Shown piece after piece: positions 6,787-53,453 of a stretch of DNA of 64,000 bases. Numbering within the stretch: position 1 is the first letter of the stretch; each line of letters starts with the position of its first letter. Below the pieces are notes generated by a model that did no database searches, was not told where the DNA came from, and saw only the letters and a list, made by a program, of their open reading frames with translations. The stretch spans positions 186,001-250,000 of IMG/VR virus record IMGVR_UViG_3300018080_008436. One strand, 5' to 3'. The position numbers and the translations under genes are program-made.

Positions 6787-6972
6787 TTCAGTACCTCTTG
6801 TTTGTAGTTTTTAGAAATTCAGTAAAGTACTATTATACATATTTTTCAACGTATTTTCCTACTATAATTCAAAAAAAAAATAAGAAAGCAAGTCGAAAGA
6901 CTAAAAAAGGGAGATCTTTTTTATCATATCTCCCTCTCAGAGTCATAAGTTGTTGAAAATTAATGACTTTTG

Positions 6973-7352
6973 TGGAGATGGCGAGAGTCGAACTCGCGTC
7001 CAGTATATCGATCCAAAAAGGTCTCTACATGCATAGTTGAGTGATTGTTTTTCAGGCTCATCCCAACAAGCCCTTAATCGTCTTACCGATTGTAGCAGTC
7101 TTTCCTATTGTCAGCGATCTTTCTCGTCGTAGCGTCCTATTCCACCAACGTGATCTTTTCTTCTGTCTGCTCAGTTAAAAACAGGCAACCCTGAGTAAGA
7201 CATCCGCTTGATTAAGCGGCTACTGCCGAAGCAGTAGGGAATTCAATTACTTTTTTAGCAATTATATTTTTGACCGATGATTAACGAGGCCAACGATCAT
7301 CCTCGACATGCAACCTAGATTTCATGACACCTGTCGATACCATTTCATCCCC
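6973..7352 (-). ncRNA. ssrA: tmRNA
   Basis: 5' GGGGATGAAATGGTATCGAC; 3' GCGAG-TTCGACT-CTCGC-CATCTCC-A; G3.U70 acceptor pair; tag frame 7259-7212 after ATAATT encodes AKKVIEFPTASAVAA-stop; CCA not encoded. Confidence 0.96.
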
Positions 7353-9252: not shown

Positions 9253-9307
9253 GTTTACTTTCCATTTCGACTGAACGGAGAAAATTGAGAATTTTCTTTA
9301 TTCCAAC

Positions 9308-9335
9308 TTGAAAAGCCCAAAAGACAGCTTATAAT
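9308..9335 (+). promoter_or_regulatory. promoter of the Gln/Asn tRNA operon
   Basis: TTGAAA-AGCCCAAAAGACAGCT-TATAAT, near-identical to the promoters at 38088-38115 and 53401-53428. Confidence 0.85.
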
Positions 9336-9375
9336 GGTAGCAACGATCAATTAAGATCAATAAGGAATTAATAAA

Positions 9376-9450
9376 ATGTCAGTACAAGTTCAGCAGAATA
9401 ATCAAAATAACCAAGCCCTTGAGGGTTTTGGGAGGTTGTTCTCTGCTTGA
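9376..9450 (+). CDS. putative attenuator leader peptide MSVQVQQNNQNNQALEGFGRLFSA
   Basis: TAAGGA SD; 9 of codons 4-13 are Gln/Asn; followed by a terminator and then Gln/Asn tRNAs. Confidence 0.88.
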   Translation: MSVQVQQNNQNNQALEGFGRLFSA

Positions 9451-9467
9451 ACATAATCCGATTTACC

Positions 9468-9500
9468 AAAGCCCTCAGGTTTCGACCTGGGGGCTTTTTT
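9468..9500 (+). terminator. attenuator terminator A
   Basis: AAAGCCCTCAGG-TTTCGA-CCTGGGGGCTTTTTT. Confidence 0.9.
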
Positions 9501-9502
9501 AT

Positions 9503-9579
9503 TGTCCGATAGCATAACTGGCTAATGCAACTGGTTCTGATCCAGTAGATTCTAGGTTCAAATCCTAGTCGGACAACCA
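9503..9579 (+). tRNA. tRNA-Gln(CTG)
   Basis: TGTCCGA/TCGGACA acceptor; ACTGG-TTCTGAT-CCAGT; encoded CCA. Confidence 0.93.
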
Positions 9580-9581
9580 AT

Positions 9582-9655
9582 GGCTCTGTAGCTCAGTGGC
9601 GAGCATTTGGCTGTTAACCAAAAGGAAGCGAGTTCGATTCTCGTCGGGGCCTCCA
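9582..9655 (+). tRNA. tRNA-Asn(GTT), short D-loop
   Basis: TTTGG-CTGTTAA-CCAAA; T arm GCGAG-TTCGATT-CTCGT; CCA. The 6-nt D loop and U73 are atypical. Confidence 0.8.
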
Positions 9656-9677
9656 GAAGTTCTTTGATAATTTATGT

Positions 9678-9768
9678 TGGTAGGTGACCCGAATGGTAAG
9701 GGCCTCGGCTGTTAACCGAGTATGGGCAGGGATGTCCTTTGCGAGTTCAAGTCTCGCCCTACCAGCCA
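9678..9768 (+). tRNA. tRNA-Asn(GTT) with long variable arm (type II)
   Basis: CTCGG-CTGTTAA-CCGAG, then V-arm GGGCA-GGGA-TGTCC; G73; CCA. Confidence 0.88.
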
Positions 9769-9771
9769 AAC

Positions 9772-9896
9772 TGTGGCGTAGCTTAATGGTTAAAGCTCTA
9801 AAAGAAAGGAGTCTGATAATAAGACTCGTTACTGCAATAATTATTCTAAATTCGTCTATTAAACGAGAGATCTTGGTTCGAATCCAAGCGCCACAG
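9772..9896 (+). tRNA. tRNA-Asn(ATT) with a 53-nt insert (9800-9852) in the anticodon stem
   Basis: TGTGGCG/CGCCACA acceptor. Removing 9800-9852 gives a perfect CTCGT-CTATTAA-ACGAG arm and a 72-nt cloverleaf. No encoded CCA. Confidence 0.7.
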
Positions 9897-9904
9897 CTAA
9901 TGAT

Positions 9905-9981
9905 TGCCTCGTAGCATAATTGGTATTGCACCAGATTTTGATTCTGGGAATTTCTGGGTTCGAGTCCCAGCGAGGCATCCA
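9905..9981 (+). tRNA. tRNA-Gln(TTG)
   Basis: TGCCTCG/CGAGGCA; CCAGA-TTTTGAT-TCTGG; CCA. Confidence 0.92.
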
Positions 9982-10032
9982 TTTTTTACCACAAATCGTT
10001 CTATTGGTAACATTAATTTGTATAATAAAACT

Positions 10033-10776
10033 ATGTTCCCAAAAGTGGAGTCGGTTGTGAAAGAAAGGGAAAAAAGAAGTTTACTTTGGCACAAATATAA
10101 TGATGAAGAATTTAGAGAACTAGTAAAAAAGTCTCAAACATATTCTGACATACTTAGAGATCATGGCATGTCAAACAAAGGGGGGAATTGCAACACGCTA
10201 AAAAAGAGAATTGCTAAACTTGGGGTTAATGACGATCATATTGCAAAGGGGCATTCTTCTAATAAAGGTAAAAAGTTCATCTCTAAAAAGATTCCACTTA
10301 ATAAGATACTTGTAGAAAATTCTACCTACAATAGGGGGCATCTAAAAAATAGAATTATAGAAGAGAAACTAATAGATTACAAATGTCAAAAATGCGGAAT
10401 AACAAATAAATGGGAAGGCAGTGAACTTGTTTTAGTACTTGATCACATAAATGGTGTCAGTAATGATCATCGACTAAAAAACCTTCGTTTTCTATGCCCC
10501 AACTGCAACAGCCAGACAAAAACTTTTGCTGGAAGAAGTAAACGCAAAAGATATTACTGTGAACAATGCGGAAAAGAAAAATCGTATAAGCATTCTAAAA
10601 AATGCAAAAGTTGTGCCGCAAAAGATCTAGAAAAACGTAAAGTCCAAAACCGCCCTTCCAAAGAAGAACTTGCCGAAATGATTGATACAATGTCTTGGCT
10701 GGCAATCGGAAAAAAATATGGAGTTTCTGATAATGCAATCAGAAAATGGGCAAGATCTTACGGTATAATATCCTAA
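10033..10776 (+). CDS. HNH homing endonuclease with C-terminal HTH
   Basis: CQKC...LDHINGVSNDHRLKNLRFLCPNCNSQT. Start is ATG 10033 or GTG 10057 (GGAG upstream), not 9904, which lies at the tRNA. Confidence 0.9.
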   Translation: MFPKVESVVKEREKRSLLWHKYNDEEFRELVKKSQTYSDILRDHGMSNKGGNCNTLKKRIAKLGVNDDHIAKGHSSNKGKKFISKKIPLNKILVENSTYNRGHLKNRIIEEKLIDYKCQKCGITNKWEGSELVLVLDHINGVSNDHRLKNLRFLCPNCNSQTKTFAGRSKRKRYYCEQCGKEKSYKHSKKCKSCAAKDLEKRKVQNRPSKEELAEMIDTMSWLAIGKKYGVSDNAIRKWARSYGIIS

Positions 10777-11138: not shown

Positions 11139-11212
11139 TACCCTATAGTGTAATGGTAGCACAAAAGTTTTTGGCACTTTTGGTCGGGGTTCAAATCCCT
11201 GTAGGGTAGCCA
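11139..11212 (+). tRNA. tRNA-Gln(TTG)
   Basis: TACCCTA/TAGGGTA; AAAGT-TTTTGGC-ACTTT; U1-A72, G73; CCA. Confidence 0.9.
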
Positions 11213-11844: not shown

Positions 11845-12200
11845 AACCATTTGAAGAAGTCTTTAAGATGTATCACGACATGGCAGGAGAGTGGAGAATG
11901 AATCTCGACAATCTGGCTTCTCTTCATCCTGACAGTCATATTGTTTTCGGAGCCGAAGAACCTGAATATGTATCAAAAGACTCTGTTATTGAAATGGATG
12001 TTTATCTCGCTGGAGAGAAAATCGGAGTCACAAGAGCCTGCGGAGAATTAGACAATGATGTCATTCGCAGAAATATGATTGGAATGAAAAGAGTCGGAGT
12101 AAAAAATGAGAGTGGTCATCACAATGCTTACTCCACAGGATTTGAGTTAACAGTTGATAAGGATAATAAAAGGATAGATTTAACTCCAAAAAAGTTTTAG
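11841..12200 (+). CDS. hypothetical protein
   Basis: 119-aa ORF whose stop overlaps the first base of tRNA-Cys. Confidence 0.65.
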   Translation: MKPFEEVFKMYHDMAGEWRMNLDNLASLHPDSHIVFGAEEPEYVSKDSVIEMDVYLAGEKIGVTRACGELDNDVIRRNMIGMKRVGVKNESGHHNAYSTGFELTVDKDNKRIDLTPKKF

Positions 12201-12319
12201 GTCGCGTAGTGTAATGGCAAGCATCTTATAAAATGAACCTGACATAAGGTTCTCTTCAGCAATAGTTAAAATCGTCTGCAAAACGAAGGGTCTGGGTTCG
12301 AATCCCAGCGCGACCTCCA
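12200..12319 (+). tRNA. tRNA-Cys(GCA) with a 45-nt insert (12228-12272) in the anticodon stem
   Basis: GGTCGCG/CGCGACC, U73, CCA. Removing 12228-12272 gives a perfect TTCGT-CTGCAAA-ACGAA arm. Confidence 0.8.
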
Positions 12320-12411: not shown

Positions 12412-13680
12412 ATGATAATTTTGAAAGGCAAATACAACGAAGCGAAGATTTTCACAGATAACGTTGAATCTTCTGCTCAGGGCCAGATCATTACCTTCTT
12501 AAATGACAAAACATTTGAGAACGGAAATATCAGGATCATGCCAGATGTTCATGCAGGTGCAGGAGCCGTTATCGGGTTTACCGCTCCAGTTGGAGATAGG
12601 ATCATTCCAAACGTCATTGGAGTTGATATTGGCTGTGGAGTCTGCGCGTTCAAACTTGGACACAGAAAAGACATTGGTGAGAAGTTTGACAAACTCGACA
12701 AATTCATTGAAAAAACCATTCCTCATGGAATGAACGTTAATGGGGACTACAGAGATCTAGCCAAAAGCGGATATTGTGGAACCAAGGATGAGTTTGACGC
12801 ATTTACCGCAGAAGTAAAAGAAGTCTGCAATAGAACTGAACAGAACTTTACCAGAGTTATGTGCTCTTTGGGTTCTTTAGGTGGTGGAAACCATTTCATT
12901 GAAATTGACAAAGATGACGAAGGTAACCTCTGGTTAGTTGTTCATTCTGGTTCCAGGAATTTCGGTTTACAGATCGCCAAGTATCACCAGAACAAAGCAA
13001 AAGAATACTTGGACTTCATGAAATCGTCTGAGAACGCTAAGTTAGTGGCAGAAGTCAAAAAGACTGCGAACAAAAAAGAGATATCTGGGAAGATCAAAAA
13101 AGCCAAAGATGAGGCTAAAGAGAAGTATGGTGTACATACTGGTCTTGAGTATCTTGAAGGTGGAGGTGCTGACCAATATAAAAAGGATATGGACGTAGCT
13201 CAAAGGTTCGCAAGTTTTAACCGATTGGTTATGGTTGGTCGAATCGTTGAAGGTTTTTATGGACTGAAGTATTCAGAGATGGAAGTTTATCACTCAATCC
13301 ATAACTATATCAACTTCGAAGATGGAATCGTTCGAAAAGGAGCAATCTCTGCTCATTGTGGTGAGAAAGTTGTCATTCCTTTAAATATGGCTGATGGAAC
13401 AATCATTGGCATCGGAAAAGGAAATGAGGACTGGAATAACAGTGCGCCTCATGGAGCAGGACGTAAAATGTCCCGTTCAAAAGCCAAGAAGTCTTTGGAT
13501 GTGGATTATTTCAGGAAAAGAATGAAACAAGCTGGAGTCTGGTCTAGTTGTGTTGGAAAAAGTACATTGGATGAAGCACCAATGGCTTACAAAAAGGCCC
13601 AAGAGATTATTGACTATTTGGAGCCAACTGTTGAGATCCAATGTCACATGAAACCAGTTTATAACTTCAAGGCGCATTAA
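12412..13680 (+). CDS. rtcB: RtcB-family RNA 2',3'-cyclic/3'-phosphate ligase
   Basis: MPDVHAG, GVDIGCG, GSLGGGNHFIE, VHSGSRNFG, HNY, RKGA, SAPHGAGR, DEAPMAYK. Confidence 0.97.
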   Translation: MIILKGKYNEAKIFTDNVESSAQGQIITFLNDKTFENGNIRIMPDVHAGAGAVIGFTAPVGDRIIPNVIGVDIGCGVCAFKLGHRKDIGEKFDKLDKFIEKTIPHGMNVNGDYRDLAKSGYCGTKDEFDAFTAEVKEVCNRTEQNFTRVMCSLGSLGGGNHFIEIDKDDEGNLWLVVHSGSRNFGLQIAKYHQNKAKEYLDFMKSSENAKLVAEVKKTANKKEISGKIKKAKDEAKEKYGVHTGLEYLEGGGADQYKKDMDVAQRFASFNRLVMVGRIVEGFYGLKYSEMEVYHSIHNYINFEDGIVRKGAISAHCGEKVVIPLNMADGTIIGIGKGNEDWNNSAPHGAGRKMSRSKAKKSLDVDYFRKRMKQAGVWSSCVGKSTLDEAPMAYKKAQEIIDYLEPTVEIQCHMKPVYNFKAH

Positions 13681-15353: not shown

Positions 15354-16334
15354 ATGAAGAGAATTATTTTTTTTTGTTTGGCGGTAATTTGTGTAACAGT
15401 ATTTGCGAAAGATGAGAACAAATACAGATCGATCTCTTTGTATGAAGAGAATGACATTGTTGCAGGCACTGACCTTGACTATACAAATGGTTTCAGGTTA
15501 CAGTACATCAGTAGTGATATTGAGACCTGGGACTTGCCAGACTGGGCCATCAAAATTGGCAAGAATCTTCCGTTATTCAATCATGAAGGTTACAAAAACA
15601 ATATTGGGATCGGATTTGGTCAGGATATGTACACTCCTACCGATATTGAAGATTTCAATTTAAGAGAAGATGACAGGCCATACGCAGGATGGCTGTATTT
15701 AGCCTTTAGTCTACATCATAAAGACGAAAATGATTTACATAAGTTGGAGTTGACGTTGGGAGTTGTTGGTCCTTACTCATTAGCTTGTGATACCCAAAAA
15801 ACAATTCATGAGTGGATTGATTCAAGAAACCCAAATGGTTGGGATCATCAGTTGGGTAATGAGTTCGGCTTGAACCTATCTTATGAATTCCGCAAGAAGT
15901 ATCTTTTCTTAGATAATTGGGTTGATGTTATCCCTAGTGCTAAGGTTAGTATTGGTAACGTTTCAACATATTTAGCAACTGGAACTACTGTTCGTTGTGG
16001 ATATAACTTGCCGAATGATTTTCATAGCAACAGGATTAGTTCTTCTGGGTTTGCTTTGCCAACCAATTACAGCAACAAAGGGGATTGGAGTGTTTATATT
16101 TTTGGCAATGTAACTGGATATGCAGTTGCTAGAGACATCTTCTTGGATGGAAATACCTTTGAGGACAGTCATAGCGTCGATAAGAAGCATTTTAAGGCCG
16201 AATTCGAGCTAGGAGTCGGGATGAGCTACAAACGCTTTTTTATGACCTATACAAGGGTTTATAAGACGAAAGAGTATGATACTCAGGAAAAGAATCATAC
16301 TTATGGATCTGTAAACCTTGGATTCAGGTTCTAA
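15354..16334 (+). CDS. lpxR: LpxR-family (lipid A deacylase-like) outer-membrane beta-barrel
   Basis: Signal peptide; ENDIVAGTDLDYTNG, GQDMYTP, DRPYAGWLY, GWDHQL, RDIFLDGNTF; C-terminal Phe. Confidence 0.85.
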   Translation: MKRIIFFCLAVICVTVFAKDENKYRSISLYEENDIVAGTDLDYTNGFRLQYISSDIETWDLPDWAIKIGKNLPLFNHEGYKNNIGIGFGQDMYTPTDIEDFNLREDDRPYAGWLYLAFSLHHKDENDLHKLELTLGVVGPYSLACDTQKTIHEWIDSRNPNGWDHQLGNEFGLNLSYEFRKKYLFLDNWVDVIPSAKVSIGNVSTYLATGTTVRCGYNLPNDFHSNRISSSGFALPTNYSNKGDWSVYIFGNVTGYAVARDIFLDGNTFEDSHSVDKKHFKAEFELGVGMSYKRFFMTYTRVYKTKEYDTQEKNHTYGSVNLGFRF

Positions 16335-36267: not shown

Positions 36268-36295
36268 CAAAAAAGCCCCCAAAAAATGGGGGCTT
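36268..36295 (-). terminator. intrinsic terminator closing the Thr/Lys tRNA operon
   Basis: AAGCCCCC-loop-GGGGGCTT followed by a U tract on the minus strand. Confidence 0.75.
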
Positions 36296-36349
36296 GAATT
36301 GCTATATGGGATATATTTTTAATTGGAAATATTACCCACATAGCAATAT

Positions 36350-36437
36350 TGGTGGAGCCGACAGGATTCGAACCTGCGCGGAGCTTGCGCTCTCTTGATT
36401 AAAAGTCAAGTACCTTCAGCCACTCGGTTACGACTCC
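36350..36437 (-). tRNA. tRNA-Lys(TTT) with long variable arm (type II)
   Basis: CTTGA-CTTTTAA-TCAAG; V-arm GAGC-GCAA-GCTC; type II-like D arm; A73; CCA. Confidence 0.9.
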
Positions 36438-36439
36438 AA

Positions 36440-37315
36440 TTAAATTATTCCATAACTTCTCGCCCATTTACGAATTGTATTACATGTTACCCCATATTTT
36501 TTACCAATAGCAACCCAAGTCATCTTATCTATCATGTCTTTTAGCTCTTCTTTAGATGGGCGATTCTGAACCTTACGACGACTTGGCAACTTACCATTAC
36601 ATGAAGTACATCTGGTGCTTCTATGCTCAATTGCTTTGTTGCAATCTACACATCTATTTGTTTTTTCTTCCTCTAGCTTTTTAACATATTCCTCTATGGT
36701 TGTTTCAATTTTACAGTTTGCACATTTGTCCTTAATGACATTTTTGATCTGGGCAACAACCATTTTTCTATGCTTTTTGTCAAGCTTATTGTATTTAGAC
36801 CACCTGATTCTATATACGAACCATCCATTGTCTTCCAAATATTTATTTCTACGCTTATCACTTTTTATTATTTTTTCATCGCAATAATGTTGCTCTCCAT
36901 CGATTTCTATGTCTATTTTTCTTATTGGATCAGAGAAATCGAGTTGATATGTGCCAACTCTGTGATGGTATATTAACTCTATATTCTCATTTCTAAATAA
37001 CTTCTCAAAATATTTTTCTGGGTACGACATTCCTTTGCTATGATGGTTAAGTAAATACGGGACTTTATCTGGATTTTCTTTAAGAAACTTTCTTCTTGCC
37101 TTACTAATCTTTTCTTTTGTTTTCTCTGACAGTTTTCTGGGTTTTAGTTTACAACTTAATTTCATGGCACTCGATCTTTCTCTTGATACAAAATCTCCTC
37201 GTTTTCTGGCAGACGTAATTGCCGCCATACTAACTCCAAATTCCTCAATAACTTCTCTCCATGTATGTCCTTCGTCATAAAACTTCTGAATTTCAATCCA
37301 ATTGTATCTAGGCAT
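36440..37315 (-). CDS. Vsr/DUF559-like endonuclease (putative homing endonuclease) with C-terminal HTH
   Basis: YQLDFS...IDIEIDGEQHY...DKRRNKYLEDNGWFVYRIRW; C-terminus nearly identical to that of the HNH ORF. Confidence 0.88.
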   Translation of the reverse strand: MPRYNWIEIQKFYDEGHTWREVIEEFGVSMAAITSARKRGDFVSRERSSAMKLSCKLKPRKLSEKTKEKISKARRKFLKENPDKVPYLLNHHSKGMSYPEKYFEKLFRNENIELIYHHRVGTYQLDFSDPIRKIDIEIDGEQHYCDEKIIKSDKRRNKYLEDNGWFVYRIRWSKYNKLDKKHRKMVVAQIKNVIKDKCANCKIETTIEEYVKKLEEEKTNRCVDCNKAIEHRSTRCTSCNGKLPSRRKVQNRPSKEELKDMIDKMTWVAIGKKYGVTCNTIRKWARSYGII

Positions 37316-37404: not shown

Positions 37405-37481
37405 TGGTGGGCTGGGTGGGACTTGAACCCACGACCAACGGAGTAAGAATCCGCGACTCTATCCAACTGAGTTACCAACCC
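37405..37481 (-). tRNA. tRNA-Lys(CTT)
   Basis: GCGGA-TTCTTAC-TCCGT; CCA. Confidence 0.92.
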
Positions 37482-37486
37482 ATTTT

Positions 37487-37561
37487 TGGTGGACCTGGAG
37501 AATTTTGAAATCTCGACCAACGGATTAAAAGTCCGCGACTCTGCCTCTGAGTTACAGGTCC
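37487..37561 (-). tRNA. tRNA-Lys(TTT)
   Basis: GCGGA-CTTTTAA-TCCGT; CCA. Confidence 0.9.
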
Positions 37562-37616
37562 AAAGTGAGAGAGCATATCTACTTCGAAGACTTAACAATA
37601 TGCTTTTAAACTCTCT

Positions 37617-37692
37617 TGGAGCCGCCTGACGGAATTGAACCGACATCCTCTGAGTACAAAACAGAGATAATAATCCTTTATACTAAGGCGGC
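37617..37692 (-). tRNA. tRNA-Thr(TGT)
   Basis: GCCGCCT/AGGCGGC; loop TTTGTAC with a U31-U39 mismatch; CCA. Confidence 0.85.
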
Positions 37693-37698
37693 GTCATA

Positions 37699-37770
37699 AG
37701 CCCTTGCCCAGCAACGATCTGGGACTAATCCCTTACGAGGGGATAGTTCTGCCAATTAAACTACAAGGGC
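37699..37770 (-). tRNA. tRNA-Thr(CGT)
   Basis: ATCCC-CTCGTAA-GGGAT; atypical T loop ATCGTTG; no encoded CCA. Confidence 0.8.
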
Positions 37771-37798
37771 ATCTTACTTAAATTTTCAAAGATCATTC

Positions 37799-37873
37799 TG
37801 GAGCATCCAATCGGACTCGAACCGATAACCCCCTCCTTACCATGGAGGAATTCTACCATTGAACTATGGATGC
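37799..37873 (-). tRNA. tRNA-Thr(GGT)
   Basis: CCTCC-ATGGTAA-GGAGG; CCA. Confidence 0.9.
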
Positions 37874-37881
37874 ATAGGCAC

Positions 37882-37915
37882 AAAAAAACCCGAAGTCTTT
37901 ATCGGACTTCGGGTT
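37882..37915 (-). terminator. attenuator terminator B
   Basis: AACCCGAAGTC-CGATAAA-GACTTCGGGTT-TTTTT. Confidence 0.9.
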
Positions 37916-37937
37916 GGTCAGTATCTTTACGTTCAGG

Positions 37938-38015
37938 TCAAGACAACAAACCTCCCGAAGCCACGCGTTTCTTCGTGGTTTTGGTTGTTTTAGTTGTCTT
38001 GGTTGTAGCGTACAT
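37938..38015 (-). CDS. putative attenuator leader peptide MYATTKTTKTTKTTKKRVASGGLLS
   Basis: TAAGGA SD; codons 4-16 are all Thr (8) or Lys (5); precedes the terminator and the Thr/Lys tRNAs. Confidence 0.9.
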   Translation of the reverse strand: MYATTKTTKTTKTTKKRVASGGLLS

Positions 38016-38087
38016 TTTTAAAATTCCTTATCTTCATTTAATTGAAGTTTATGAGCATTGTTCATTAAACTCGCTCAAGTTACCCCT

Positions 38088-38115
38088 ATTATAAGCTATG
38101 TTTGGAGCTTTTCAA
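38088..38115 (-). promoter_or_regulatory. promoter of the Thr/Lys tRNA operon
   Basis: TTGAAA-AGCTCCAAACATAGCT-TATAAT. Confidence 0.85.
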
Positions 38116-38139
38116 GCGCAACTGAGATTTTTTTTGAAA

Positions 38140-39348
38140 TTATGGACAAGTCTCGTTTCCAACAGTAGGAACGTATGATGGCGCACCTTTCCATCCTGCC
38201 CAAGTATCAGTTCCAACACCATTAGCTTGGAGTGCATCCCACTTAATGGTCAAATTACCATATGACCCCAAACTAGAAGCATCAAATGTAACGAATGTAA
38301 AACTGCTATTGGGAATAACTGTGGTTGAAGTTAGTGTACCTACATAAACTCCAGCAGAAATCCTGTTGTTATATTGAGAGTTTGTTCCCAAATTGATCCA
38401 TACATGATGGTAAATATTGCTTCTTAAATAACAAGCAACTTTTTGAAATGTGGAATAAGATCCGCCAATTCTTAATTGCATTGATCCATTATAAGTGTTA
38501 TTCCAAGATTCTGCTGGACTATTGCTATACGTACCTGGACATATTATTTTTGATTCTCCATTGTACCATGAGACGAATCCTGTCCCATCATGCAACCAGT
38601 TAATGCTGTTTGCCGTTCCAGTCCAACAAAGAGTAACTTTCATTCTAGGATCTGAATTCCCCCCACACATAATTTTGGGCAATGGAGGTCCATCACTTTC
38701 TGAAGAACTTGAGGAACTATCTGGAGGTAAACCAGAACTGGAAGATTCAGAGTATGAACTCTCAGAGTATGAACTGGAAGATTCAGAGTATGAAGATTCA
38801 GAATATGAACTGGATGATTCAGAATATGAACTTTCGGAGTATGAACTGCTAGACTCTGAAGAATTGCACCCTCCTTCACATACTTCTATTACTTCTCCCT
38901 CTGTGTAATTTAGATATGCTCCTGGAGTTGCTAAGACAATTGCATCCTCACTACCCCAATTTGTATAAGTCCCTTCATCAAATCCATTAATACAGACAGT
39001 TCCCTCTGAGATATTGCCAAAAAGAGTTGGTGGAGAAAACCAAAGGGTATTTTTAACTTCTGATATCCCACCAATTGTTACGTTAACACATTCAATAGAG
39101 CTTGAAGAAGATGGTGCGGCCAAAGATTCTGAAGAAGATGATCCTCCACCAAAAGACTCTGAAGATTCAGACAAAAGGCTCTCGGAGGAAGAGCTTGCGA
39201 GTTCACAAGCCAAACAGGAATCAAAAGTACCCTCAATCTCAAATGGGAAAGCATTTCTTGGTTTTGTTGTTTCACCAGAGAATTTGTAACATTGACCATC
39301 TATCTTTATAGATGATCCTTGATAATCATCAAATACTTTGCTTGACAT
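38140..39348 (-). CDS. Ser-linker protein with shared N-terminal module
   Basis: MSSKVFDDYQGSSIKIDGQCYKFSGET...SCLACELASSSS. Confidence 0.8.
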   Translation of the reverse strand: MSSKVFDDYQGSSIKIDGQCYKFSGETTKPRNAFPFEIEGTFDSCLACELASSSSESLLSESSESFGGGSSSSESLAAPSSSSSIECVNVTIGGISEVKNTLWFSPPTLFGNISEGTVCINGFDEGTYTNWGSEDAIVLATPGAYLNYTEGEVIEVCEGGCNSSESSSSYSESSYSESSSSYSESSYSESSSSYSESSYSESSSSGLPPDSSSSSSESDGPPLPKIMCGGNSDPRMKVTLCWTGTANSINWLHDGTGFVSWYNGESKIICPGTYSNSPAESWNNTYNGSMQLRIGGSYSTFQKVACYLRSNIYHHVWINLGTNSQYNNRISAGVYVGTLTSTTVIPNSSFTFVTFDASSLGSYGNLTIKWDALQANGVGTDTWAGWKGAPSYVPTVGNETCP

Positions 39349-39413: not shown

Positions 39414-39605
39414 TTATTTTTTGGATCGTTCCCTATTTAACGACTCTCTAAGGGAATAAGTGTCGAAGGCCATGACCGAAATCATTTCAAGCATTACTTG
39501 ATCCAAAGGCTTATAGCCACCTTTATACAATTTTAGTAAACTCTCTACGTGATAATTATGTTTGGCGATTCTCTCCAATTCCCCTAACAGCTTCCTCTTC
39601 CTCAT
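39414..39605 (-). CDS. hypothetical protein
   Basis: 63 aa, overlaps the upstream ORF. Confidence 0.5.
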   Translation of the reverse strand: MRKRKLLGELERIAKHNYHVESLLKLYKGGYKPLDQVMLEMISVMAFDTYSLRESLNRERSKK

Positions 39606-40005
39606 TTGTACCAGCCATTAGTTTAATCCTTTTCTTTGTTTTCTCGATAACGTCAGCAAACTTTGAACCCCCAAAAGGGCAATAGTGACATTCCATGTCT
39701 TTATTCCTCATTTCCCTCATCATAACCTTTGCTCCACGCAAATTTAATGAGTGAACAATGATAGATAATTTCTTATTTGGAGTCTCATGAAGTCGTCTTG
39801 CAACAGTAGCCCCAGTATTAAATTCATCACTATCTACATACTGTCTTCCCTCAAGATCATGATCTAGGAAAATATAGTCATACTTATTGGTATTTAGCCA
39901 CTCCATTGCAAGGTCAACTTGGTCAGTAATGTCTAACTGACATGGTAAATGCTCTCTAAAAATTGCGATTCTTCTTGGGTCATCTTCCAGGATAAAAACT
40001 CTCAT
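39556..40005 (-). CDS. stand-alone receiver-like domain (cyclic-phosphate-processing receiver type)
   Basis: MRVFILEDDPRR...YIFLDHDLEG...IIVHSLN..G..M pattern. Confidence 0.65.
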   Translation of the reverse strand: MRVFILEDDPRRIAIFREHLPCQLDITDQVDLAMEWLNTNKYDYIFLDHDLEGRQYVDSDEFNTGATVARRLHETPNKKLSIIVHSLNLRGAKVMMREMRNKDMECHYCPFGGSKFADVIEKTKKRIKLMAGTNEEEEAVRGIGENRQT

Positions 40006-49873: not shown

Positions 49874-50440
49874 TTAAAAAGATCCTTGTTGATATTCATA
49901 AACTGTTGGGGTTACATCAATAGATTTTTGGTTATATTCCCAAACATTTTGTGGGAAGCAAGCCTCTTCACAAACATCAACAACTTGGTCTTCTGAGAAA
50001 TTCTGATAAGCAAGTGGAGCGTCAAGAGTGATGATGTCTTCTGCTCCATAGTTTCTGTAATGACCACTGTAAATCGCATCTATACAAACAGGTCCTTCGT
50101 TAATGACCCCTAAAAATGGGGGTGGTGAGAACTGCAATCCATTTATGTTTTCAAGTACATGTTGAATAGTACCATTAGTACACTCATAAGAACTTGAAGA
50201 CGATTCATTACCAACAGATTCTGAAGATGAACTTTCTGCTCCAATAGATTCAGATGATTCTGACAATGAACTTTCAGATGAAGAACTATCTAAAGCACAT
50301 TCCAAACATGAATCAAAAACTTCTTCGATTTCAATTGGATAAGAATTAATAGGTTTTACGGTTTCACCGATCCATTTATAACAAACACCATTAATCTTAA
50401 TGGATGCTCCTTGATAATCGTCAAATATTTTATTCGCCAT
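49874..50440 (-). CDS. shared N-module protein
   Basis: MANKIFDDYQGASIKINGVCYKWIGET. Confidence 0.78.
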   Translation of the reverse strand: MANKIFDDYQGASIKINGVCYKWIGETVKPINSYPIEIEEVFDSCLECALDSSSSESSLSESSESIGAESSSSESVGNESSSSSYECTNGTIQHVLENINGLQFSPPPFLGVINEGPVCIDAIYSGHYRNYGAEDIITLDAPLAYQNFSEDQVVDVCEEACFPQNVWEYNQKSIDVTPTVYEYQQGSF

Positions 50441-50450
50441 AATTTACTCC

Positions 50451-51869
50451 TTAAACTGCTCCACCATCATAAACTGCTCCCCATTCTGATCCAATTGCAG
50501 TTCTCCCTGCTTCAGCGGCACCTCCCGCAGTGTATTTACTGTTGCCGAACGTTGGGATTCCTGCGGCAGGTTTTAACGATTGACCTCCCCATGAAATCAG
50601 AAGTGCATCATAGTTAGCAGTAGACAGGGCATCGTAAGGAGTGCCACGAGCTATTTCTGCCATGAACTCATGTATTACTGTGACGTTAGAAACATCCCAG
50701 TTGCTGAGGTCTTGGTCAAAATTAGGTTGGAACCTAATGGCTTGTTGAATATCAGTAACGCTTGATGTATCCCACACCCCTATCGGCTGATTGAATACGC
50801 CTCTACTGGCTAAAGTTGCACCTAGCATATTTGCCAGTGTTGTCACGTTACCCATGTTTGTAAAGTTTTGGATCGCGCCATTGAATAAAGGACAAGTATT
50901 AAACATACCTGAGCAGTCAGTGACACTATTCATGTCCCAGTTCCAATTTGCGCTTGCGCCTGTCATTCCAGTACATCCTGCGAACATCCATGAACAATCC
51001 GAACACGCCGACAAATCAGGCACATCAGATGCGGTGATTTCAAGGCCACTACAACTCGAAAATGCGTTAGCCATCTGAGGCCACTGATACGTTCCCCACT
51101 GTCGAATTTCTTTGAGCTTTGATGCATATCCCCATCCTGAAATCCAACCAGAAGAAGAAGAGAAGTCAACAGACATTTCATACTCGGTATCTGCGTCAGG
51201 ATAGATATGTTCGATTATAAATCCACCAGTAACCGTTTGTTGGTTTCCATCACCCCAATCAATATATGTTGTGTTAGGGTTACCTATGTAAATTTGAACT
51301 GTTTTATTCTCTCCTGAATCCCACAATGCTTTAAAAAGATCACCCTCAGGGTAAGAACTGCTTGACGAACTTGAAGTTGAACATGGATCATCACAAACCT
51401 CTACAACTTGTCCAACCGAATACTTACTTGCCGCACCTGGCTCAACTAAAGAAATACCAATCCAAAGACCAACATTTATCTCTCCAATATCATTTCCATT
51501 TACACAAACAAAACCTGAAAAAGTATTTAATGGAGAAGTTGATTCAAAGCCTAATACATTTCCTACAATGGTTAATATTGAAACAGTGGCACAACCTTCT
51601 GAACTTGATGAAGAAACATTTTCTTCACTTTCTGAAGAATTGGAACTAGAAGAACTGCTAACATTACCAATTGATTCAGAAGATGATGATTGAGTACTTT
51701 CTGATGAACTTGATTCAATAGCACATTCGAGACAATTATCAAAAACTTCTTCTATTTCGCTTGGGCTTGAATTAACAGAACTAGTTGTTTCACCGATCCA
51801 TTTATAACAAACCCCACCTATTTTAATTGATGCTCCTTGATAATCGTCAAATATTTTTTCTCTACCCAT
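50451..51869 (-). CDS. shared N-module + BspA/DUF285-type repeat protein
   Basis: WDMNSVTDCSGMF, WDTSSVT, NFDQDLSNWDVSNVT repeats. Confidence 0.85.
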   Translation of the reverse strand: MGREKIFDDYQGASIKIGGVCYKWIGETTSSVNSSPSEIEEVFDNCLECAIESSSSESTQSSSSESIGNVSSSSSSNSSESEENVSSSSSEGCATVSILTIVGNVLGFESTSPLNTFSGFVCVNGNDIGEINVGLWIGISLVEPGAASKYSVGQVVEVCDDPCSTSSSSSSSYPEGDLFKALWDSGENKTVQIYIGNPNTTYIDWGDGNQQTVTGGFIIEHIYPDADTEYEMSVDFSSSSGWISGWGYASKLKEIRQWGTYQWPQMANAFSSCSGLEITASDVPDLSACSDCSWMFAGCTGMTGASANWNWDMNSVTDCSGMFNTCPLFNGAIQNFTNMGNVTTLANMLGATLASRGVFNQPIGVWDTSSVTDIQQAIRFQPNFDQDLSNWDVSNVTVIHEFMAEIARGTPYDALSTANYDALLISWGGQSLKPAAGIPTFGNSKYTAGGAAEAGRTAIGSEWGAVYDGGAV

Positions 51870-51944: not shown

Positions 51945-52026
51945 TGGTATGGGGGGTGGGACTTGAACCCACAGAAATTCACTTGTTTATAAGACAAGCC
52001 GCTTAACCAAATTTGCGTACCCCCAC
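51945..52026 (-). tRNA. tRNA-Ile(TAT)
   Basis: CTTGT-CTTATAA-ACAAG; 9-nt variable region; A73; CCA. Confidence 0.85.
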
Positions 52027-52042
52027 ACAGGTAAGAAGTTTT

Positions 52043-52149
52043 GGGGAGGTGGGGAGGCTCACTGGGGTAAGTGGCTTCTTATTATATTGCCGTCCATTGT
52101 GTCAGCCCGTTCTCCTTCTAACGGGTGTTTCCGATGACATGGCATCCCC
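52043..52149 (-). ncRNA. unidentified structured RNA between tRNA-Val and tRNA-Ile
   Basis: Closing GGGGA/TCCCC helix; nested CCAT-TGTCA..TGACA-ATGG and CCCGTT/AACGGG stems; second hairpin GAAGCCACT/AGTGAGCCTC. GC-rich within an AT-rich context. Confidence 0.5.
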
Positions 52150-52151
52150 TT

Positions 52152-52228
52152 TGGTGGGCAGTACAGGACTCGAACCTGTCACGACCTCGGTGTAAACGAG
52201 GCATTCTAGCCAAATGAATTAACTGCCC
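52152..52228 (-). tRNA. tRNA-Val(TAC)
   Basis: CCTCG-TTTACAC-CGAGG; CCA. Confidence 0.93.
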
Positions 52229-52259
52229 AGTAAAATCATATTCGAAATACTTCTTTCAT

Positions 52260-52287
52260 ATTATAACCTAAATTTCCTTTAGTTCAA
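52260..52287 (-). promoter_or_regulatory. internal promoter upstream of tRNA-Val/ncRNA/tRNA-Ile
   Basis: TTGAAC-16 nt-TATAAT. Confidence 0.65.
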
Positions 52288-52292
52288 CAAAC

Positions 52293-52373
52293 AAGCTGAT
52301 TTATTTTTTGAAGGGTTTGAACCTTCTAGATGGTGTAAGCATCGTTAACCTGTTTTTTGCTGTAATCAGCCTT
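52293..52373 (-). ncRNA. small RNA with end-pairing stem, ACAGCAA motif and a T-arm
   Basis: AGGCTGATT/AATCAGCTT stem; internal GAAGG-TTCAAAC-CCTTC. Confidence 0.55.
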
Positions 52374-52379
52374 TATTTT

Positions 52380-52456
52380 TGGTGGACCTACACGGATTCG
52401 AACCGAGATTTCCTCCCTGCCAGAGAGGTGTGTTAGCCATTAGTCACTATAAGCCC
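52380..52456 (-). tRNA. tRNA-Ala(GGC)
   Basis: CCTCT-CTGGCAG-GGAGG; G3.U70; CCA. Confidence 0.88.
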
Positions 52457-52490
52457 TTTTTGTTTCATAACTCGTTGATAATTAACGACT

Positions 52491-52569
52491 TGGTGGAGAC
52501 GGTCGGAATCGAACCGACCACATGCTGGTTGCAAACCAGTATCGCCAAAGCCTTGGTACATGCGCCCCC
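52491..52569 (-). tRNA. tRNA-Ala(TGC), atypical D arm
   Basis: CTGG-TTTGCAA-CCAG; G3.U70; CCA. Confidence 0.82.
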
Positions 52570-52574
52570 AAGTT

Positions 52575-52820
52575 TTAAACGCCTAATTCGTTATCCTCAA
52601 AAAACACAACATCCGAAATCGGTTCTAGTCTTTCGTATGTCTCATTCCATATTTCAATTTCTTCATCCGTCAATGCAACCTTGTCATTTTTACAGTTCCA
52701 TCGATCTTTGTCTGGACACCAACAACTGCCTTCTGCATGTATCCATTGTGCCATGCATTTCTCAAACATTTTCTTGTAATCTACGTTGTCTTCCATCGTC
52801 TGTCTCCAGTATCTGGTCAT
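52575..52820 (-). CDS. hypothetical protein within the tRNA cluster
   Basis: 81 aa; may start at MEDNVDY. Confidence 0.5.
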   Translation of the reverse strand: MTRYWRQTMEDNVDYKKMFEKCMAQWIHAEGSCWCPDKDRWNCKNDKVALTDEEIEIWNETYERLEPISDVVFFEDNELGV

Positions 52821-52861
52821 TTATACGGACATCATGGCCACATAAATGGCCACATAAGTCT

Positions 52862-52938
52862 TGGTGGAGCATAAGAGACTCGAACTCTTGACATCCTGCT
52901 TGCAAAGCAGGTGCTCTAGCCATCTGAGCTAATGCCCC
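52862..52938 (-). tRNA. tRNA-Ala(TGC)
   Basis: Canonical GGGGCATTAGCTCAG...CCTGC-TTTGCAA-GCAGG; G3.U70; CCA. Confidence 0.95.
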
Positions 52939-52999
52939 AAAATACGGGATACCTAAGCATTGCCCGTTTTTGAATGGATGTCGAAACATTGCCATTCTT

Positions 53000-53092
53000 T
53001 GGTGGAGAAGATTGGAGTCGAACCAATTAAAATTGTTTGCCGAAGAGAGCCTTATAACAAGCTCAGTTTGCCCTCCGCAGGGCATCTTCTCC
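53000..53092 (-). ncRNA. tRNA-like RNA lacking a canonical anticodon arm
   Basis: GGAGAAG/CTTCTCC acceptor, GCCCT-GCGG-AGGGC arm, ATTGG-TTCGACT-CCAAT T arm, ACCA; the centre is the hairpin+TCTTCGGCAA element. Confidence 0.65.
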
Positions 53093-53129
53093 AGTTGTTT
53101 TAGAACTCTGTTCGTTAAAACATCGTTCT

Positions 53130-53206
53130 TGGTAGTTGGGACAGGACTCGAACCTGCATCCTCCGATATGTAAAAACGGTGCTCCGCGCAATTAAGCTAC
53201 CCAACC
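53130..53206 (-). tRNA. tRNA-Val(TAC)
   Basis: Loop TTTACAT, one stem mismatch; CCA. Confidence 0.8.
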
Positions 53207-53232: not shown

Positions 53233-53263
53233 AAAAAAAGCCCTGTCATTTCTGACAGGGCTT
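53233..53263 (-). terminator. attenuator terminator C
   Basis: AAGCCCTGTCA-GAAA-TGACAGGGCTT-TTTTT. Confidence 0.92.
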
Positions 53264-53285
53264 AAACCGACTTCTGGAAACTACA

Positions 53286-53372
53286 TCATCCAGAAAGAGC
53301 AGAAAAGCCCTGCCCGTCTGCGACTACCGCGACGGCTACTACTGCTATGGCTATTTCTACTCTCTTTTTCAT
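53286..53372 (-). CDS. putative attenuator leader peptide MKKRVEIAIAVVAVAVVADGQGFSALSG
   Basis: GGAG SD 9 nt upstream; 13 of codons 5-18 are Val/Ala/Ile; both Ile codons are ATA. Confidence 0.88.
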   Translation of the reverse strand: MKKRVEIAIAVVAVAVVADGQGFSALSG

Positions 53373-53400
53373 AAAACATATCTCCAGTTACGTTGCCCCT

Positions 53401-53428
53401 ATTATAAGGCATCTATTTGGCTTTTCAA
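53401..53428 (-). promoter_or_regulatory. promoter of the Val/Ala/Ile tRNA operon
   Basis: TTGAAA-AGCCAAATAGATGCCT-TATAAT. Confidence 0.85.
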
Positions 53429-53453
53429 GCTCGAATCGAAAATAAATTCGTCT

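What the first reader, a model, noticed from the sequence alone, without database searches (positions are those of the whole stretch)
37882..38115. Attenuator B: Thr/Lys leader MYATTKTTKTTKTTKK...
Thirteen consecutive codons are Thr (ACA, ACC, ACT, ACG) or Lys (AAG, AAA), ahead of 3 Thr and 3 Lys tRNAs that together read all of them. GGCTTCGGG pairs with CCCGAAGTC of the terminator, and CAAGACAAC/GTTGTCTTG gives the competing 1:2 helix. tRNA-Lys(UUU) is the established PrrC target, so this unit could sense anticodon-nuclease attack (inference).
Basis: partly seen in the sequence, partly recalled or inferred. Interest (0 to 1): 0.88.

Follow-up and report, generated by a model that had tools for sequence, protein, structure and literature searches.

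The report
Codon-sensing switches gating phage tRNA genes
A giant phage puts a short test reading frame, rich in the codons read by the tRNA genes that follow, plus a transcription stop signal in front of five tRNA gene clusters, so it probably makes those tRNAs only when decoding of those codons slows down; I found no description of this kind of control for tRNA genes.

Summary
A near-consensus promoter (38116-38088) is followed by a Shine-Dalgarno site and a 25-codon ORF (38015-37938) with 13 consecutive Thr/Lys codons. An 11-bp terminator with a T-tract ends 8 nt before tRNA-Thr(GGU). Three Thr and three Lys tRNAs follow.

It is not a one-off. The same design, with an almost identical promoter, precedes the Gln/Asn cluster (leader QVQQNNQNNQ) and the Val/Ala/Ile cluster (leader VEIAIAVVAVAVVA) in the window. 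Two further units sit about 23-43 kb outside it in the same ~524-kb phage genome: Phe (IFRFF) and Glu/Pro (EPEREEPP).

Among 138 tRNA-upstream regions scanned, the three window units rank first by more than three orders of magnitude. Folding with a ribosome placed at each codon gives the classical three states in all five units.

Best explanation: ribosome-mediated (leader-peptide) transcription attenuators that open a tRNA operon when decoding of its own codons is slow. This is a known mechanism applied to a target class, tRNA genes, that I found nowhere in the literature or Rfam. The link to anticodon-nuclease defence is plausible but untested. No relatives exist for covariation, and nothing is shown experimentally.

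The parts
38088..38116 (-). Unit B promoter, CTTGAAAAGC-N11-CTTATAAT (-35 TTGAAA, 16-nt spacer, -10 TATAAT), followed by a G-rich discriminator (AGGGGTAAC)
   Evidence: 11 of 12 matches; the motif occurs exactly 3 times in the window, always at a tRNA unit, and 0 of 100 shuffles reach 3; alignment of the five units.
38024..38029 (-). Shine-Dalgarno AAGGAA, 8 nt before the leader ATG
   Evidence: Read from the sequence. Unit A has the same motif and spacing. The phage's long ORFs use AGGAG-type sites.
37938..38015 (-). Unit B leader ORF, 25 codons plus UGA: MYATTKTTKTTKTTKKRVASGGLLS*
37968..38006 (-). Regulatory run: 13 consecutive Thr/Lys codons (codons 4-16)
   Evidence: p = 1.7e-11 in the control scan.
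37987..38001 (-). Region 1, inside the codon run. It pairs with region 2' at 37951..37939, which includes the UGA stop, to form the 1:2 helix (9+4 bp).
   Evidence: Duplex test 1-4 of 2000 shuffles.
37954..37962 (-). Antiterminator strand GGCUUCGGG (leader codons 18-21). It pairs with 37913..37905 of the terminator 5' arm.
   Evidence: 4 of 2000 shuffles.
37882..37915 (-). Intrinsic terminator: 11-bp stem (37915..37905 : 37897..37887), 7-nt loop, T7 tract 37888..37882. It ends 8 nt before the first tRNA.
   Evidence: Hairpin -16.6 kcal/mol.
37405..37873 (-). Regulated genes of unit B: tRNA-Thr(GGU) 37873..37799, Thr(CGU) 37770..37699, Thr(UGU) 37692..37617, Lys(UUU) 37561..37487, Lys(CUU) 37481..37405
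36273..37315 (-). Distal part of operon B: endonuclease ORF (DUF559 / REase fold, 37315..36440), a second tRNA-Lys(UUU) of 88 nt (36437..36350), and an operon-end terminator (36295..36273)
9307..9335 (+). Unit A promoter (same motif)
9376..9450 (+). Unit A leader MSVQVQQNNQNNQALEGFGRLFSA* (Gln CAA x3, CAG x2; Asn AAT x3, AAC x1). SD AAGGAA at 9362-9367.
   Evidence: p = 4.4e-9.
9420..9497 (+). Unit A switch: antiterminator 9420-9431 : 9466-9477 (12 bp), and terminator 9468-9480 : 9485-9497 (13 bp) plus T-tract. The 1:2 helix is 9388-9403 : 9434-9452.
   Evidence: 2:3 duplex 0 of 2000 shuffles.
9503..9981 (+). Operon A: tRNA-Gln(CUG), Asn(GUU), Asn(GUU, 91 nt), Gln(UUG). An HNH ORF (9904-10776) and another Gln(UUG) at 11139-11212 follow.
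53401..53429 (-). Unit C promoter (same motif)
53286..53372 (-). Unit C leader MKKRVEIAIAVVAVAVVADGQGFSALSG*. Both Ile codons are AUA, matching tRNA-Ile(UAU). Val is GUA in 4 of 6 codons, matching tRNA-Val(UAC), against 23% GUA in phage genes. SD GGAG at 53385..53382.
   Evidence: p = 4.0e-8.
53238..53314 (-). Unit C switch: antiterminator 53314..53305 : 53263..53254 (10 bp), and terminator 53263..53238 (11 bp) plus T-tract. The 1:2 helix is 53364..53349 : 53309..53295.
   Evidence: 2:3 duplex 4 of 2000 shuffles.
51945..53206 (-). Operon C: tRNA-Val(UAC), Ala(UGC), Ala(GGC), Val(UAC), Ile(UAU)

Best explanation
The finding is one of at least five paralogous ribosome-mediated (leader-peptide) transcription attenuators. 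Each gates a tRNA operon of a ~524-kb phage. A strong sigma-70-type promoter fires, and a ribosome loads on a 14-28-codon leader ORF. If the ribosome stalls in the run of codons read by the downstream tRNAs, it holds region 1 open. The distal part of the leader ORF (region 2) then pairs with the 5' arm of the terminator (region 3), and RNA polymerase reads through into the tRNA genes. If decoding is fast, the ribosome runs on over region 2 to the stop codon, the terminator (3:4) forms, and transcription ends a few bases before the first tRNA. Without translation, the 1:2 helix sequesters region 2 and the terminator forms as well. The output (tRNA) relieves the signal (slow decoding of its own codons), so each unit is a negative-feedback, on-demand supply circuit for two or three amino-acid families. 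Shortage of any one of them opens the operon (multivalent). Shown from sequence: the parts, their order, the codon/tRNA match and the alternative helices. Inferred: that ribosomes stall there, that read-through changes, and what depletes the tRNAs in nature.
For: 1. Anatomy of unit B.
2. Five units share one promoter (CTTGAAAAG-N14-TATAAT-RGNNG-YAAC), while the leader codons differ and track the downstream tRNAs. These are Gln/Asn, Thr/Lys and Val/Ala/Ile, and Phe and Glu/Pro.
3. Codon-level match: Ile is AUA x2 before tRNA-Ile(UAU), and Val is biased to GUA before tRNA-Val(UAC).
4. Control scan of 138 tRNA-upstream regions (224 tRNAs): the three window units score p = 1.7e-11, 4.4e-9 and 4.0e-8, and the next best is 4e-5. 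Unit E scores 3.5e-8.
5. There is no room for another promoter. The terminator T-tract ends 5-8 nt before the first tRNA in A and B and about 30 nt before it in C.
6. Ribosome-position folding. In B even the equilibrium MFE loses the terminator when the ribosome sits at codons 3-10. In A-E the nascent RNA pairs 7-13 nt of the terminator 5' arm with the leader's distal part while the ribosome is in the run, and loses that pairing once it passes. In D the no-ribosome state gives 1:2 and a free terminator arm.
7. Shuffle tests: 2:3 duplexes are reached by 0, 4 and 4 of 2000 shuffles; 1:2 duplexes by 26, 4 and 124 of 2000.
8. An internal negative control in the same genome: the mixed Asp/Asp/Met/His cluster has neither a cognate leader nor a terminator.
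Against: - There is no experimental or expression data.
- No diverged relatives exist. All assemblies of this phage are 100% identical in the units, so covariation can only be read across paralogs.
- For units A, C, D and E the terminator remains the equilibrium MFE in every ribosome position. The switch appears only in the co-transcriptional (truncated-RNA) model (versus 30, 94).
- The 1:2 helix of unit C is not significant on its own (124 of 2000).
- Unit D has only three Phe codons (p = 2e-3).
- In unit E the leader has no GAG or CCC/CCU codon for tRNA-Glu(CUC) and Pro(GGG).
- The host is unknown, so tight transcription-translation coupling, which this mechanism needs, is assumed.
- A promoter-like site inside operon C (52287..52260) could express its last two tRNAs independently.
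Confidence: 0.85

Rival explanations
1. Same attenuator hardware, but its natural purpose is counter-defence. The units detect depletion of particular host tRNAs by anticodon or anticodon-stem nucleases (PrrC-, PARIS- or colicin-like) and answer with replacement phage tRNAs. This refines the best explanation rather than excluding it.
For: - PARIS AriB is reported to deplete tRNA-Lys(UUU), Thr(UGU), Thr(CGU) and Asn(GUU), and phage T5 variants of these tRNAs rescue infection (PMC12409363). All four anticodons sit behind attenuators A and B.
- The phage encodes RtcB 2.4 kb from operon A, a cREC receiver-domain protein 1.4 kb upstream of unit B, a Pnk-like AAA_33+PNK3P protein and a tmRNA. Together these form a tRNA and ribosome rescue kit.
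- One of the two Lys(UUU) genes carries C41, the position whose change is reported to inhibit AriB cleavage.
Against: - The Val/Ala/Ile, Phe and Glu/Pro units have no known matching nuclease set that I could document.
- The other Lys(UUU) has the cleavable UAAUCA motif.
- The host and its defence systems are unknown.
- tRNA sets containing Lys, Thr and Asn are common in phages anyway.
Confidence: 0.3
2. The units are classical amino-acid starvation sensors. They respond to uncharged tRNA when Thr, Lys and the other amino acids are scarce, and tRNA output is a by-product or serves another purpose.
For: The mechanism cannot distinguish low tRNA from low charging. The design is the same as the thr, ilv, pheA and pheST leaders (for pheM). 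Weak sub-threshold Rfam resemblance to Thr_leader, His_leader and Phe_leader.
Against: Making more tRNA does not relieve amino-acid starvation, so there is no feedback benefit. No biosynthetic, transport or synthetase gene lies in any of the five operons. The G-rich discriminator after the -10 box resembles stringently controlled stable-RNA promoters, which would shut the unit off in starvation (an inference from sequence).
Confidence: 0.1
3. There is no regulation. The hairpins are leaky constitutive terminators or processing signals, and the small ORFs are untranslated coincidences or encode peptides with their own function.
For: Gene callers did not annotate the leaders. Terminators are very stable in equilibrium folds.
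Against: Five of five units have leader composition that matches the downstream tRNAs, each with p between 1e-8 and 1e-11 for four of them. All have SD sites at 8-9 nt. All have an antiterminator strand inside the ORF. A constitutive strong terminator between the only promoter and the tRNAs would make the genes useless.
Confidence: 0.04
4. Ribosome-independent, T-box-like sensing: uncharged tRNAs pair directly with the codon run and stabilise the antiterminator.
For: The codon run presents many specifier-like triplets.
Against: No T-box family match at gathering or relaxed thresholds. There is no Stem I or T-box sequence. All five units have an SD, an AUG, an in-frame run and a stop codon placed next to region 2, features that only matter if the RNA is translated.
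Confidence: 0.02

Closest known systems
thr operon leader (thrL attenuator, Rfam RF00506) and other amino-acid biosynthesis leaders (his, leu, ilv, trp, pheA)
   Same: Promoter, SD, short ORF with a run of regulatory codons, 1:2 / 2:3 / 3:4 alternative helices, and an intrinsic terminator. Control is multivalent, with more than one amino acid in a leader, as in thr (Thr+Ile) and ilv.
   Different: The regulated genes are tRNA genes, not enzymes. The unit is in a phage. There is no sequence-family membership: Thr_leader scores 18.4 bits against a gathering score of 55. The feedback acts on tRNA supply, not on amino-acid supply.
E. coli pheM-pheST attenuator (leader peptide [14 protein letters not shown])
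   Same: A leader-peptide attenuator in front of a translation-apparatus gene that reads the state of one tRNA species. The unit D leader (MNNLNNIFRFFSHL) is also 14 codons and shares the IFRFF core.
   Different: pheM controls the synthetase, not the tRNA. Homology is not established: five shared residues, three of them the expected Phe, and DNA that does not align. Phe_leader scores 15.6 bits against a gathering score of 55.
T-box riboswitches
   Same: They sense the status of a specific tRNA and switch terminator to antiterminator upstream of translation-related genes.
   Different: A T-box binds the tRNA directly and needs no ribosome. Here there is a translated ORF, and no T-box motif or Rfam match.
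Phage tRNA arrays as counter-defence (T5 tRNAs versus PARIS, PMC12409363 and PMC11464382; T4 Pnk/Rnl1 repair of PrrC damage)
   Same: Phage-encoded Lys, Thr and Asn tRNAs, together with RNA-repair enzymes.
   Different: The papers I read on those arrays mention no sensor for them. Here each array sits behind a conditional terminator keyed to its own codons.

Membership tests
Ribosome-mediated (leader-peptide) transcription attenuator | Promoter followed by a short ORF with a ribosome-binding site | tested here: met
   Promoter 11 of 12 in A, B and C. SD at 8-9 nt. ORFs of 14-28 codons.
Ribosome-mediated (leader-peptide) transcription attenuator | Run of regulatory codons cognate to the regulated function | tested here: met
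   Five of five units match their downstream tRNAs.
Ribosome-mediated (leader-peptide) transcription attenuator | Intrinsic terminator between the leader ORF and the regulated genes | tested here: met
   Units D and E have two in tandem.
Ribosome-mediated (leader-peptide) transcription attenuator | Antiterminator (2:3) mutually exclusive with the terminator, with region 2 maskable by a ribosome that finishes the leader | tested here: met
   Shuffle tests. In silico only.
Ribosome-mediated (leader-peptide) transcription attenuator | 1:2 helix that overlaps the regulatory codons (default termination, pause) | tested here: inconclusive
   Clear in B (1-4 of 2000), A (6-26 of 2000) and D. Not significant alone in C (124 of 2000).
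Ribosome-mediated (leader-peptide) transcription attenuator | Read-through rises when the cognate charged tRNA is limiting | not testable with these tools
   Needs a reporter or in vitro assay.
Ribosome-mediated (leader-peptide) transcription attenuator | Regulated genes are amino-acid biosynthesis, transport or aminoacyl-tRNA synthetase genes (the classical scope) | tested here: not met
   All five operons contain tRNA genes, plus homing-type endonuclease ORFs.
Rfam Thr_leader RF00506 (and His_leader, Phe_leader) | Covariance-model score at or above the gathering threshold | tested here: not met
   Thr_leader 18.4 against 55. His_leader 25.2 against 49 on unit A. Phe_leader 15.6 against 55 on unit D. 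Nothing at gathering.
T-box riboswitch | Stem I specifier loop and conserved T-box sequence (Rfam RF00230) | tested here: not met
   No match at gathering or at E <= 10.
Anticodon-nuclease sensing / counter-defence module | Induction by tRNA cleavage (PrrC, PARIS) and nuclease-resistant replacement tRNAs | not testable with these tools
   Circumstantial only: target overlap with AriB, anticodon stem-loop sequences, and RtcB, Pnk-like and cREC genes.

The most novel reading that the evidence does not exclude
The five attenuators form a distributed, codon-resolved tRNA-supply sensor. The phage monitors decoding speed for at least 12 amino acids. When particular host tRNAs are destroyed, for example by PARIS-, PrrC- or colicin-like tRNases or by host shut-off, it switches on only the matching replacement tRNA operon, alongside RtcB/Pnk repair. 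This would be the first sensing arm described for phage tRNA counter-defence and the first tRNA operon autoregulated by its own decoding.
Probability: 0.3. Interest if true: 0.95.

Novelty: new variant of a known kind. Interest (0 to 1): 0.88.

Why it matters
Leader-peptide attenuation is a textbook mechanism, but its known targets are amino-acid biosynthesis, transport and synthetase genes. As far as I could find, tRNA genes are described as controlled at the promoter or by processing. Seven full-text searches turned up no tRNA genes controlled this way.

Here the sensor (decoding of codon X) and the product (tRNA for codon X) close a direct loop, and the design was copied and re-coded five times in one genome. 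That re-coding is natural evidence that the codon run is the functional part.

If it is confirmed:
- It shows that huge phages regulate their tRNA supply on demand rather than expressing it constitutively.
- It offers a testable link between tRNA-targeting immunity and phage response.
- It provides compact, orthogonal codon-specific sensors of tRNA availability for synthetic biology.
- It suggests a simple search rule (small ORF enriched in cognate codons, plus a terminator, before a tRNA cluster) for finding more cases.

Tried and rejected
- GenBank phage similarity: none for the 7-kb surroundings. Distant blastn of unit B plus its tRNAs hit only tRNA bodies.
- Relatives through neighbouring proteins. 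The nearest RtcB is 65% identical, sits on a 2.9-kb contig and is not syntenic. The 186-aa ORF upstream of unit C has no homologue among 5.8 billion proteins. Relatives of the endonuclease ORF led to unrelated phages.
- Promoter-pattern scans. The strict motif found only this phage in IMG/VR and in metagenomes. In genomes it found coding-sequence coincidences plus two ordinary bacterial tRNA promoters without leaders (L157, L398). A loose motif saturated with chance hits.
- Back-translated TTKTTKTTK scan: only low-complexity protein repeats.
- All assemblies of the phage are identical in the units, so there is no population variation to use.
- Walking 10 kb beyond each window end found no further clusters.
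- Candidate leaders elsewhere were rejected. L063 is a hydrophobic small protein. L205 and L209 are out-of-frame in an endonuclease gene. L452 is an ordinary gene.
- The alternative frame of unit C (Ser/Arg-rich, from an ATG 7 nt upstream) is a by-product of the GYN periodicity. Its SD is only 2 nt from that ATG, and there are no Ser or Arg tRNAs downstream.
- I considered stop-codon recoding because all three window leaders end in UGA. I rejected it: long ORFs tile the window under table 11 and use all three stops.

Full report
**1. Observation.**
The feature lies on the minus strand. Reading 38116 to 37799:
- A promoter TTGAAA-16-TATAAT, 11 of 12 matches.
- An AAGGAA Shine-Dalgarno site 8 nt before an ATG.
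- A 25-codon ORF, MYATTKTTKTTKTTKKRVASGGLLS*, at 38015..37938.
- An 11-bp GC-rich hairpin with a T7 tract at 37915..37882.
- Eight bases later, tRNA-Thr(GGU), followed by Thr(CGU), Thr(UGU), Lys(UUU) and Lys(CUU). Then come an endonuclease ORF, a second Lys(UUU) and an operon-end terminator.

Codons 4-16 are all Thr or Lys and use all four ACN and both AAR codons. The region folds 5.3 sd better than its shuffles.

**2. The same design recurs, and the codons change with the tRNAs.**
The 29-nt promoter motif CTTGAAAAGC-N11-CTTATAAT occurs exactly three times in the 64-kb window. Each copy lies in front of a tRNA cluster, and 0 of 100 shuffles reach three.
- Unit A (plus strand, leader 9376-9450) encodes MSVQVQQNNQNNQALEGFGRLFSA* and precedes tRNA-Gln, Asn, Asn and Gln.
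- Unit C (minus strand, 53372..53286) encodes MKKRVEIAIAVVAVAVVADGQGFSALSG* and precedes tRNA-Val, Ala, Ala, Val and Ile.

The match reaches codon level. Both Ile codons are AUA, the codon of the encoded tRNA-Ile(UAU). Four of six Val codons are GUA, which suits tRNA-Val(UAC), although GUA is only 23% of Val codons in the phage's long ORFs.

Relaxing the promoter pattern found two more units in the same genome, about 23-43 kb beyond the window end.
- Unit D has the leader MNNLNNIFRFFSHL* before two tRNA-Phe(GAA).
- Unit E has the leader MNNYMYIREPEREEPPAFGRRSADL* before Glu, Pro, Glu, Pro, Glu and Pro.

All five promoters align with an invariant CTTGAAAAG ... TATAAT.G..G.AAC. The leaders' C-terminal parts resemble each other (G-F/L-G-R, S-A). 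The units therefore look like duplicates whose codon runs were re-written.

A mixed Asp/Asp/Met/His cluster in the same genome has neither leader nor terminator. This serves as an internal negative control.

**3. Chance.**
I scanned 138 tRNA-upstream regions covering 224 tRNAs. For each I looked for the small ORF most enriched in the amino acids of the downstream tRNAs, scored against local base composition.
- The three window units score 1.7e-11, 4.4e-9 and 4.0e-8. The best of the rest is 4e-5.
- Unit E scores 3.5e-8. Unit D, with only three Phe codons, scores 2e-3.
- Complementarity between the leader's distal part and the terminator 5' arm is reached by 0, 4 and 4 of 2000 dinucleotide shuffles in A, B and C.
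- The 1:2 helix is reached by 6-26, 1-4 and 124-491 of 2000, depending on how region 1 is delimited.

**4. Mechanism from folding.**
I blocked the bases covered by a ribosome at each leader codon.
- In unit B the equilibrium structure itself switches. With the ribosome at codons 3-10 the terminator has 0 of 11 pairs and the GGCUUCGGG:CCCGAAGUC antiterminator forms. From codon 11 onwards, or without a ribosome, the terminator is intact.
- In A, C, D and E the terminators are too stable to lose at equilibrium.
- On the nascent RNA, before the 3' arm is made, 7-13 nt of the 5' arm are held by the leader's distal part for as long as the ribosome is in the codon run. That pairing disappears once the ribosome moves past.
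- In D the ribosome-free RNA forms 1:2 and leaves the terminator arm free, which is the default-off state.
- D and E carry two terminators in tandem. The 3' arm of the first is complementary to the 5' arm of the second, so releasing the first can relay to the second. This relay is my inference.
- The T-tract ends 5-8 nt before the first tRNA in A and B. The tRNAs can therefore only be made by reading through.

**5. Context.**
The window is part of a ~524-kb phage genome. It is seen as near-identical contigs in IMG/VR (476 and 296 kb), JGI (Ga0180433_10000003, 524,692 bp) and ENA (523,871 bp). GC content is 37-41%.

A full-length LpxR homologue (E = 4e-102), SD-led genes and sigma-70-type promoters point to a Gram-negative host that uses Shine-Dalgarno sites.

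Translation and RNA-repair genes lie around the units:
- a tmRNA;
- an RtcB ligase;
- a cREC receiver-domain protein;
- an IF3 homologue;
- a Pnk-like AAA_33+PNK3P protein.

**6. Relatives and dead ends.**
No diverged relative could be found by DNA, by neighbouring proteins or by pattern scans of the viral, metagenome and genome collections. Evidence for structure therefore rests on five paralogs, not on phylogenetic covariation.

**7. Known systems.**
- Rfam has no match at gathering. Relaxed searches give only sub-threshold resemblance to Thr_leader (18.4 against 55), His_leader (25.2 against 49) and Phe_leader (15.6 against 55).
- The closest known logic is the E. coli pheM-pheST attenuator. 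Its leader, read from MG1655, is [14 protein letters not shown]. Unit D's 14-codon leader shares IFRFF with it, but homology is not established.
- Seven full-text searches found no report of leader-peptide attenuation of tRNA genes in phages or bacteria. The library lacks many subscription papers, so absence is not proof.

**8. What triggers it.**
The hardware reads decoding speed. It cannot tell low tRNA from low charging. Because the output is tRNA, the coherent reading is on-demand tRNA supply.

PARIS AriB is reported to deplete tRNA-Lys(UUU), Thr(UGU), Thr(CGU) and Asn(GUU) (PMC12409363). All four anticodons lie behind units A and B, and RtcB and a Pnk-like protein are encoded nearby. I could not document a matching nuclease for the Val/Ala/Ile, Phe or Glu/Pro units, and the host is unknown. 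I give this refinement about 0.3.

**9. Verdict.**
The finding is one member of a five-unit family of leader-peptide attenuators controlling phage tRNA operons. It is a new variant of a known mechanism, of high interest, and awaits a simple reporter test.

Noticed in passing
L430:7803-8162 (-) and L430:12422-13822 (-); same DNA in L431, L440, L449 and L450; about 23-43 kb beyond the window end: Two further attenuator units of the same phage: Phe (leader MNNLNNIFRFFSHL, two tRNA-Phe) and Glu/Pro (leader ...IREPEREEPP..., six tRNAs). Each has two tandem terminators, and the 3' arm of the first is complementary to the 5' arm of the second.
   Followed up: yes
window 36440-37315 (-) and 9904-10776 (+): Two paralogous endonuclease ORFs (DUF559/REase and HNH, with a shared C-terminal HTH-like tail) are inserted inside tRNA operons B and A. 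Each is flanked by two copies of the same isoacceptor (Lys UUU; Gln UUG), which looks like homing-endonuclease insertion with target duplication.
   Followed up: partly
window 9678-9768, 36350-36437, 12200-12316: Unusually long tRNAs: Asn of 91 nt, Lys of 88 nt, and a 117-nt Rfam-only tRNA match directly upstream of RtcB that ARAGORN does not call. They may carry introns or long extra arms, which is interesting next to a tRNA-splicing-type ligase.
   Followed up: no
window 12412-13680 (+), 39556-40005 (-), 6972-7352 (-); L449:8974-9486; L450:18020-19447: A translation and RNA-repair kit: RtcB ligase, a cREC_REC (cyclic-phosphate processing receiver) protein, a tmRNA (tag AKKVIEFPTASAVAA), an IF3 homologue and a Pnk-like AAA_33+PNK3P protein.
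   Followed up: partly
window 15354-16334 (+): A full-length homologue of the outer-membrane lipid A deacylase LpxR (Pfam E = 4e-102). It is an unusual phage cargo and a clue that the host is Gram-negative.
   Followed up: no
window 38140-39348, 50451-51869, 49874-50440 (all -): A family of Ser-rich proteins with a conserved N-terminus (KIFDDYQG.SIKI.G.CYK...). Members flank tRNA units B and C, and one carries DUF285 repeats.
   Followed up: no
leader stop codons: window 37938-37940, 9448-9450, 53286-53288; L430 8064-8066, 13691-13693: None of the five leaders ends in UAA (three UGA, two UAG), although 26 of 33 long ORFs do. In A and B the UGA lies inside the 1:2 helix. Units D and E have a CGA Arg codon inside the regulatory run (FRFF, EREE).
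   Followed up: no
window 53379-53281 (-): An overlapping ORF from an ATG 7 nt upstream of the unit C leader start reads as a Ser/Arg-rich peptide (..SRNSHSSSSRRGSRRR..). I judged it a by-product of the GYN codon periodicity. Its SD spacing is poor, and there are no Ser or Arg tRNAs downstream.
   Followed up: partly
window 52260-52287 (-): A promoter-like site (TTGAAC-16-TATAAT, 10 of 12) inside operon C, 32 nt before the second tRNA-Val. It could express Val and Ile(UAU) independently of the attenuator. An 81-aa ORF (52575-52820) sits between the two Ala tRNAs.
   Followed up: no
L451:20076-21176 (-): A tRNA cluster Asp, Asp, Met, (223-aa ORF), His of the same phage has no cognate leader and no terminator, so not all of its tRNA genes are attenuated.
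   Followed up: yes
L014:9379-9700 (+): In an unrelated IMG/VR phage, a small ORF with 3 Trp in 8 residues (MFIKSWIKGLWFWF...) and a terminator-like hairpin lie upstream of a lone tRNA-Trp next to RtcB (p = 4e-5, within what the number of tests would give). It is a possible independent case, but no clear antiterminator was seen.
   Followed up: partly
L157:558-764, L398:2159-2290: Two bacterial tRNA genes (Ser in a GC-rich metagenome contig, Val in a Lentisphaeria MAG) have promoters matching the phage's 18 specified promoter bases exactly. This suggests the phage units use a stable-RNA-type host promoter.
   Followed up: no
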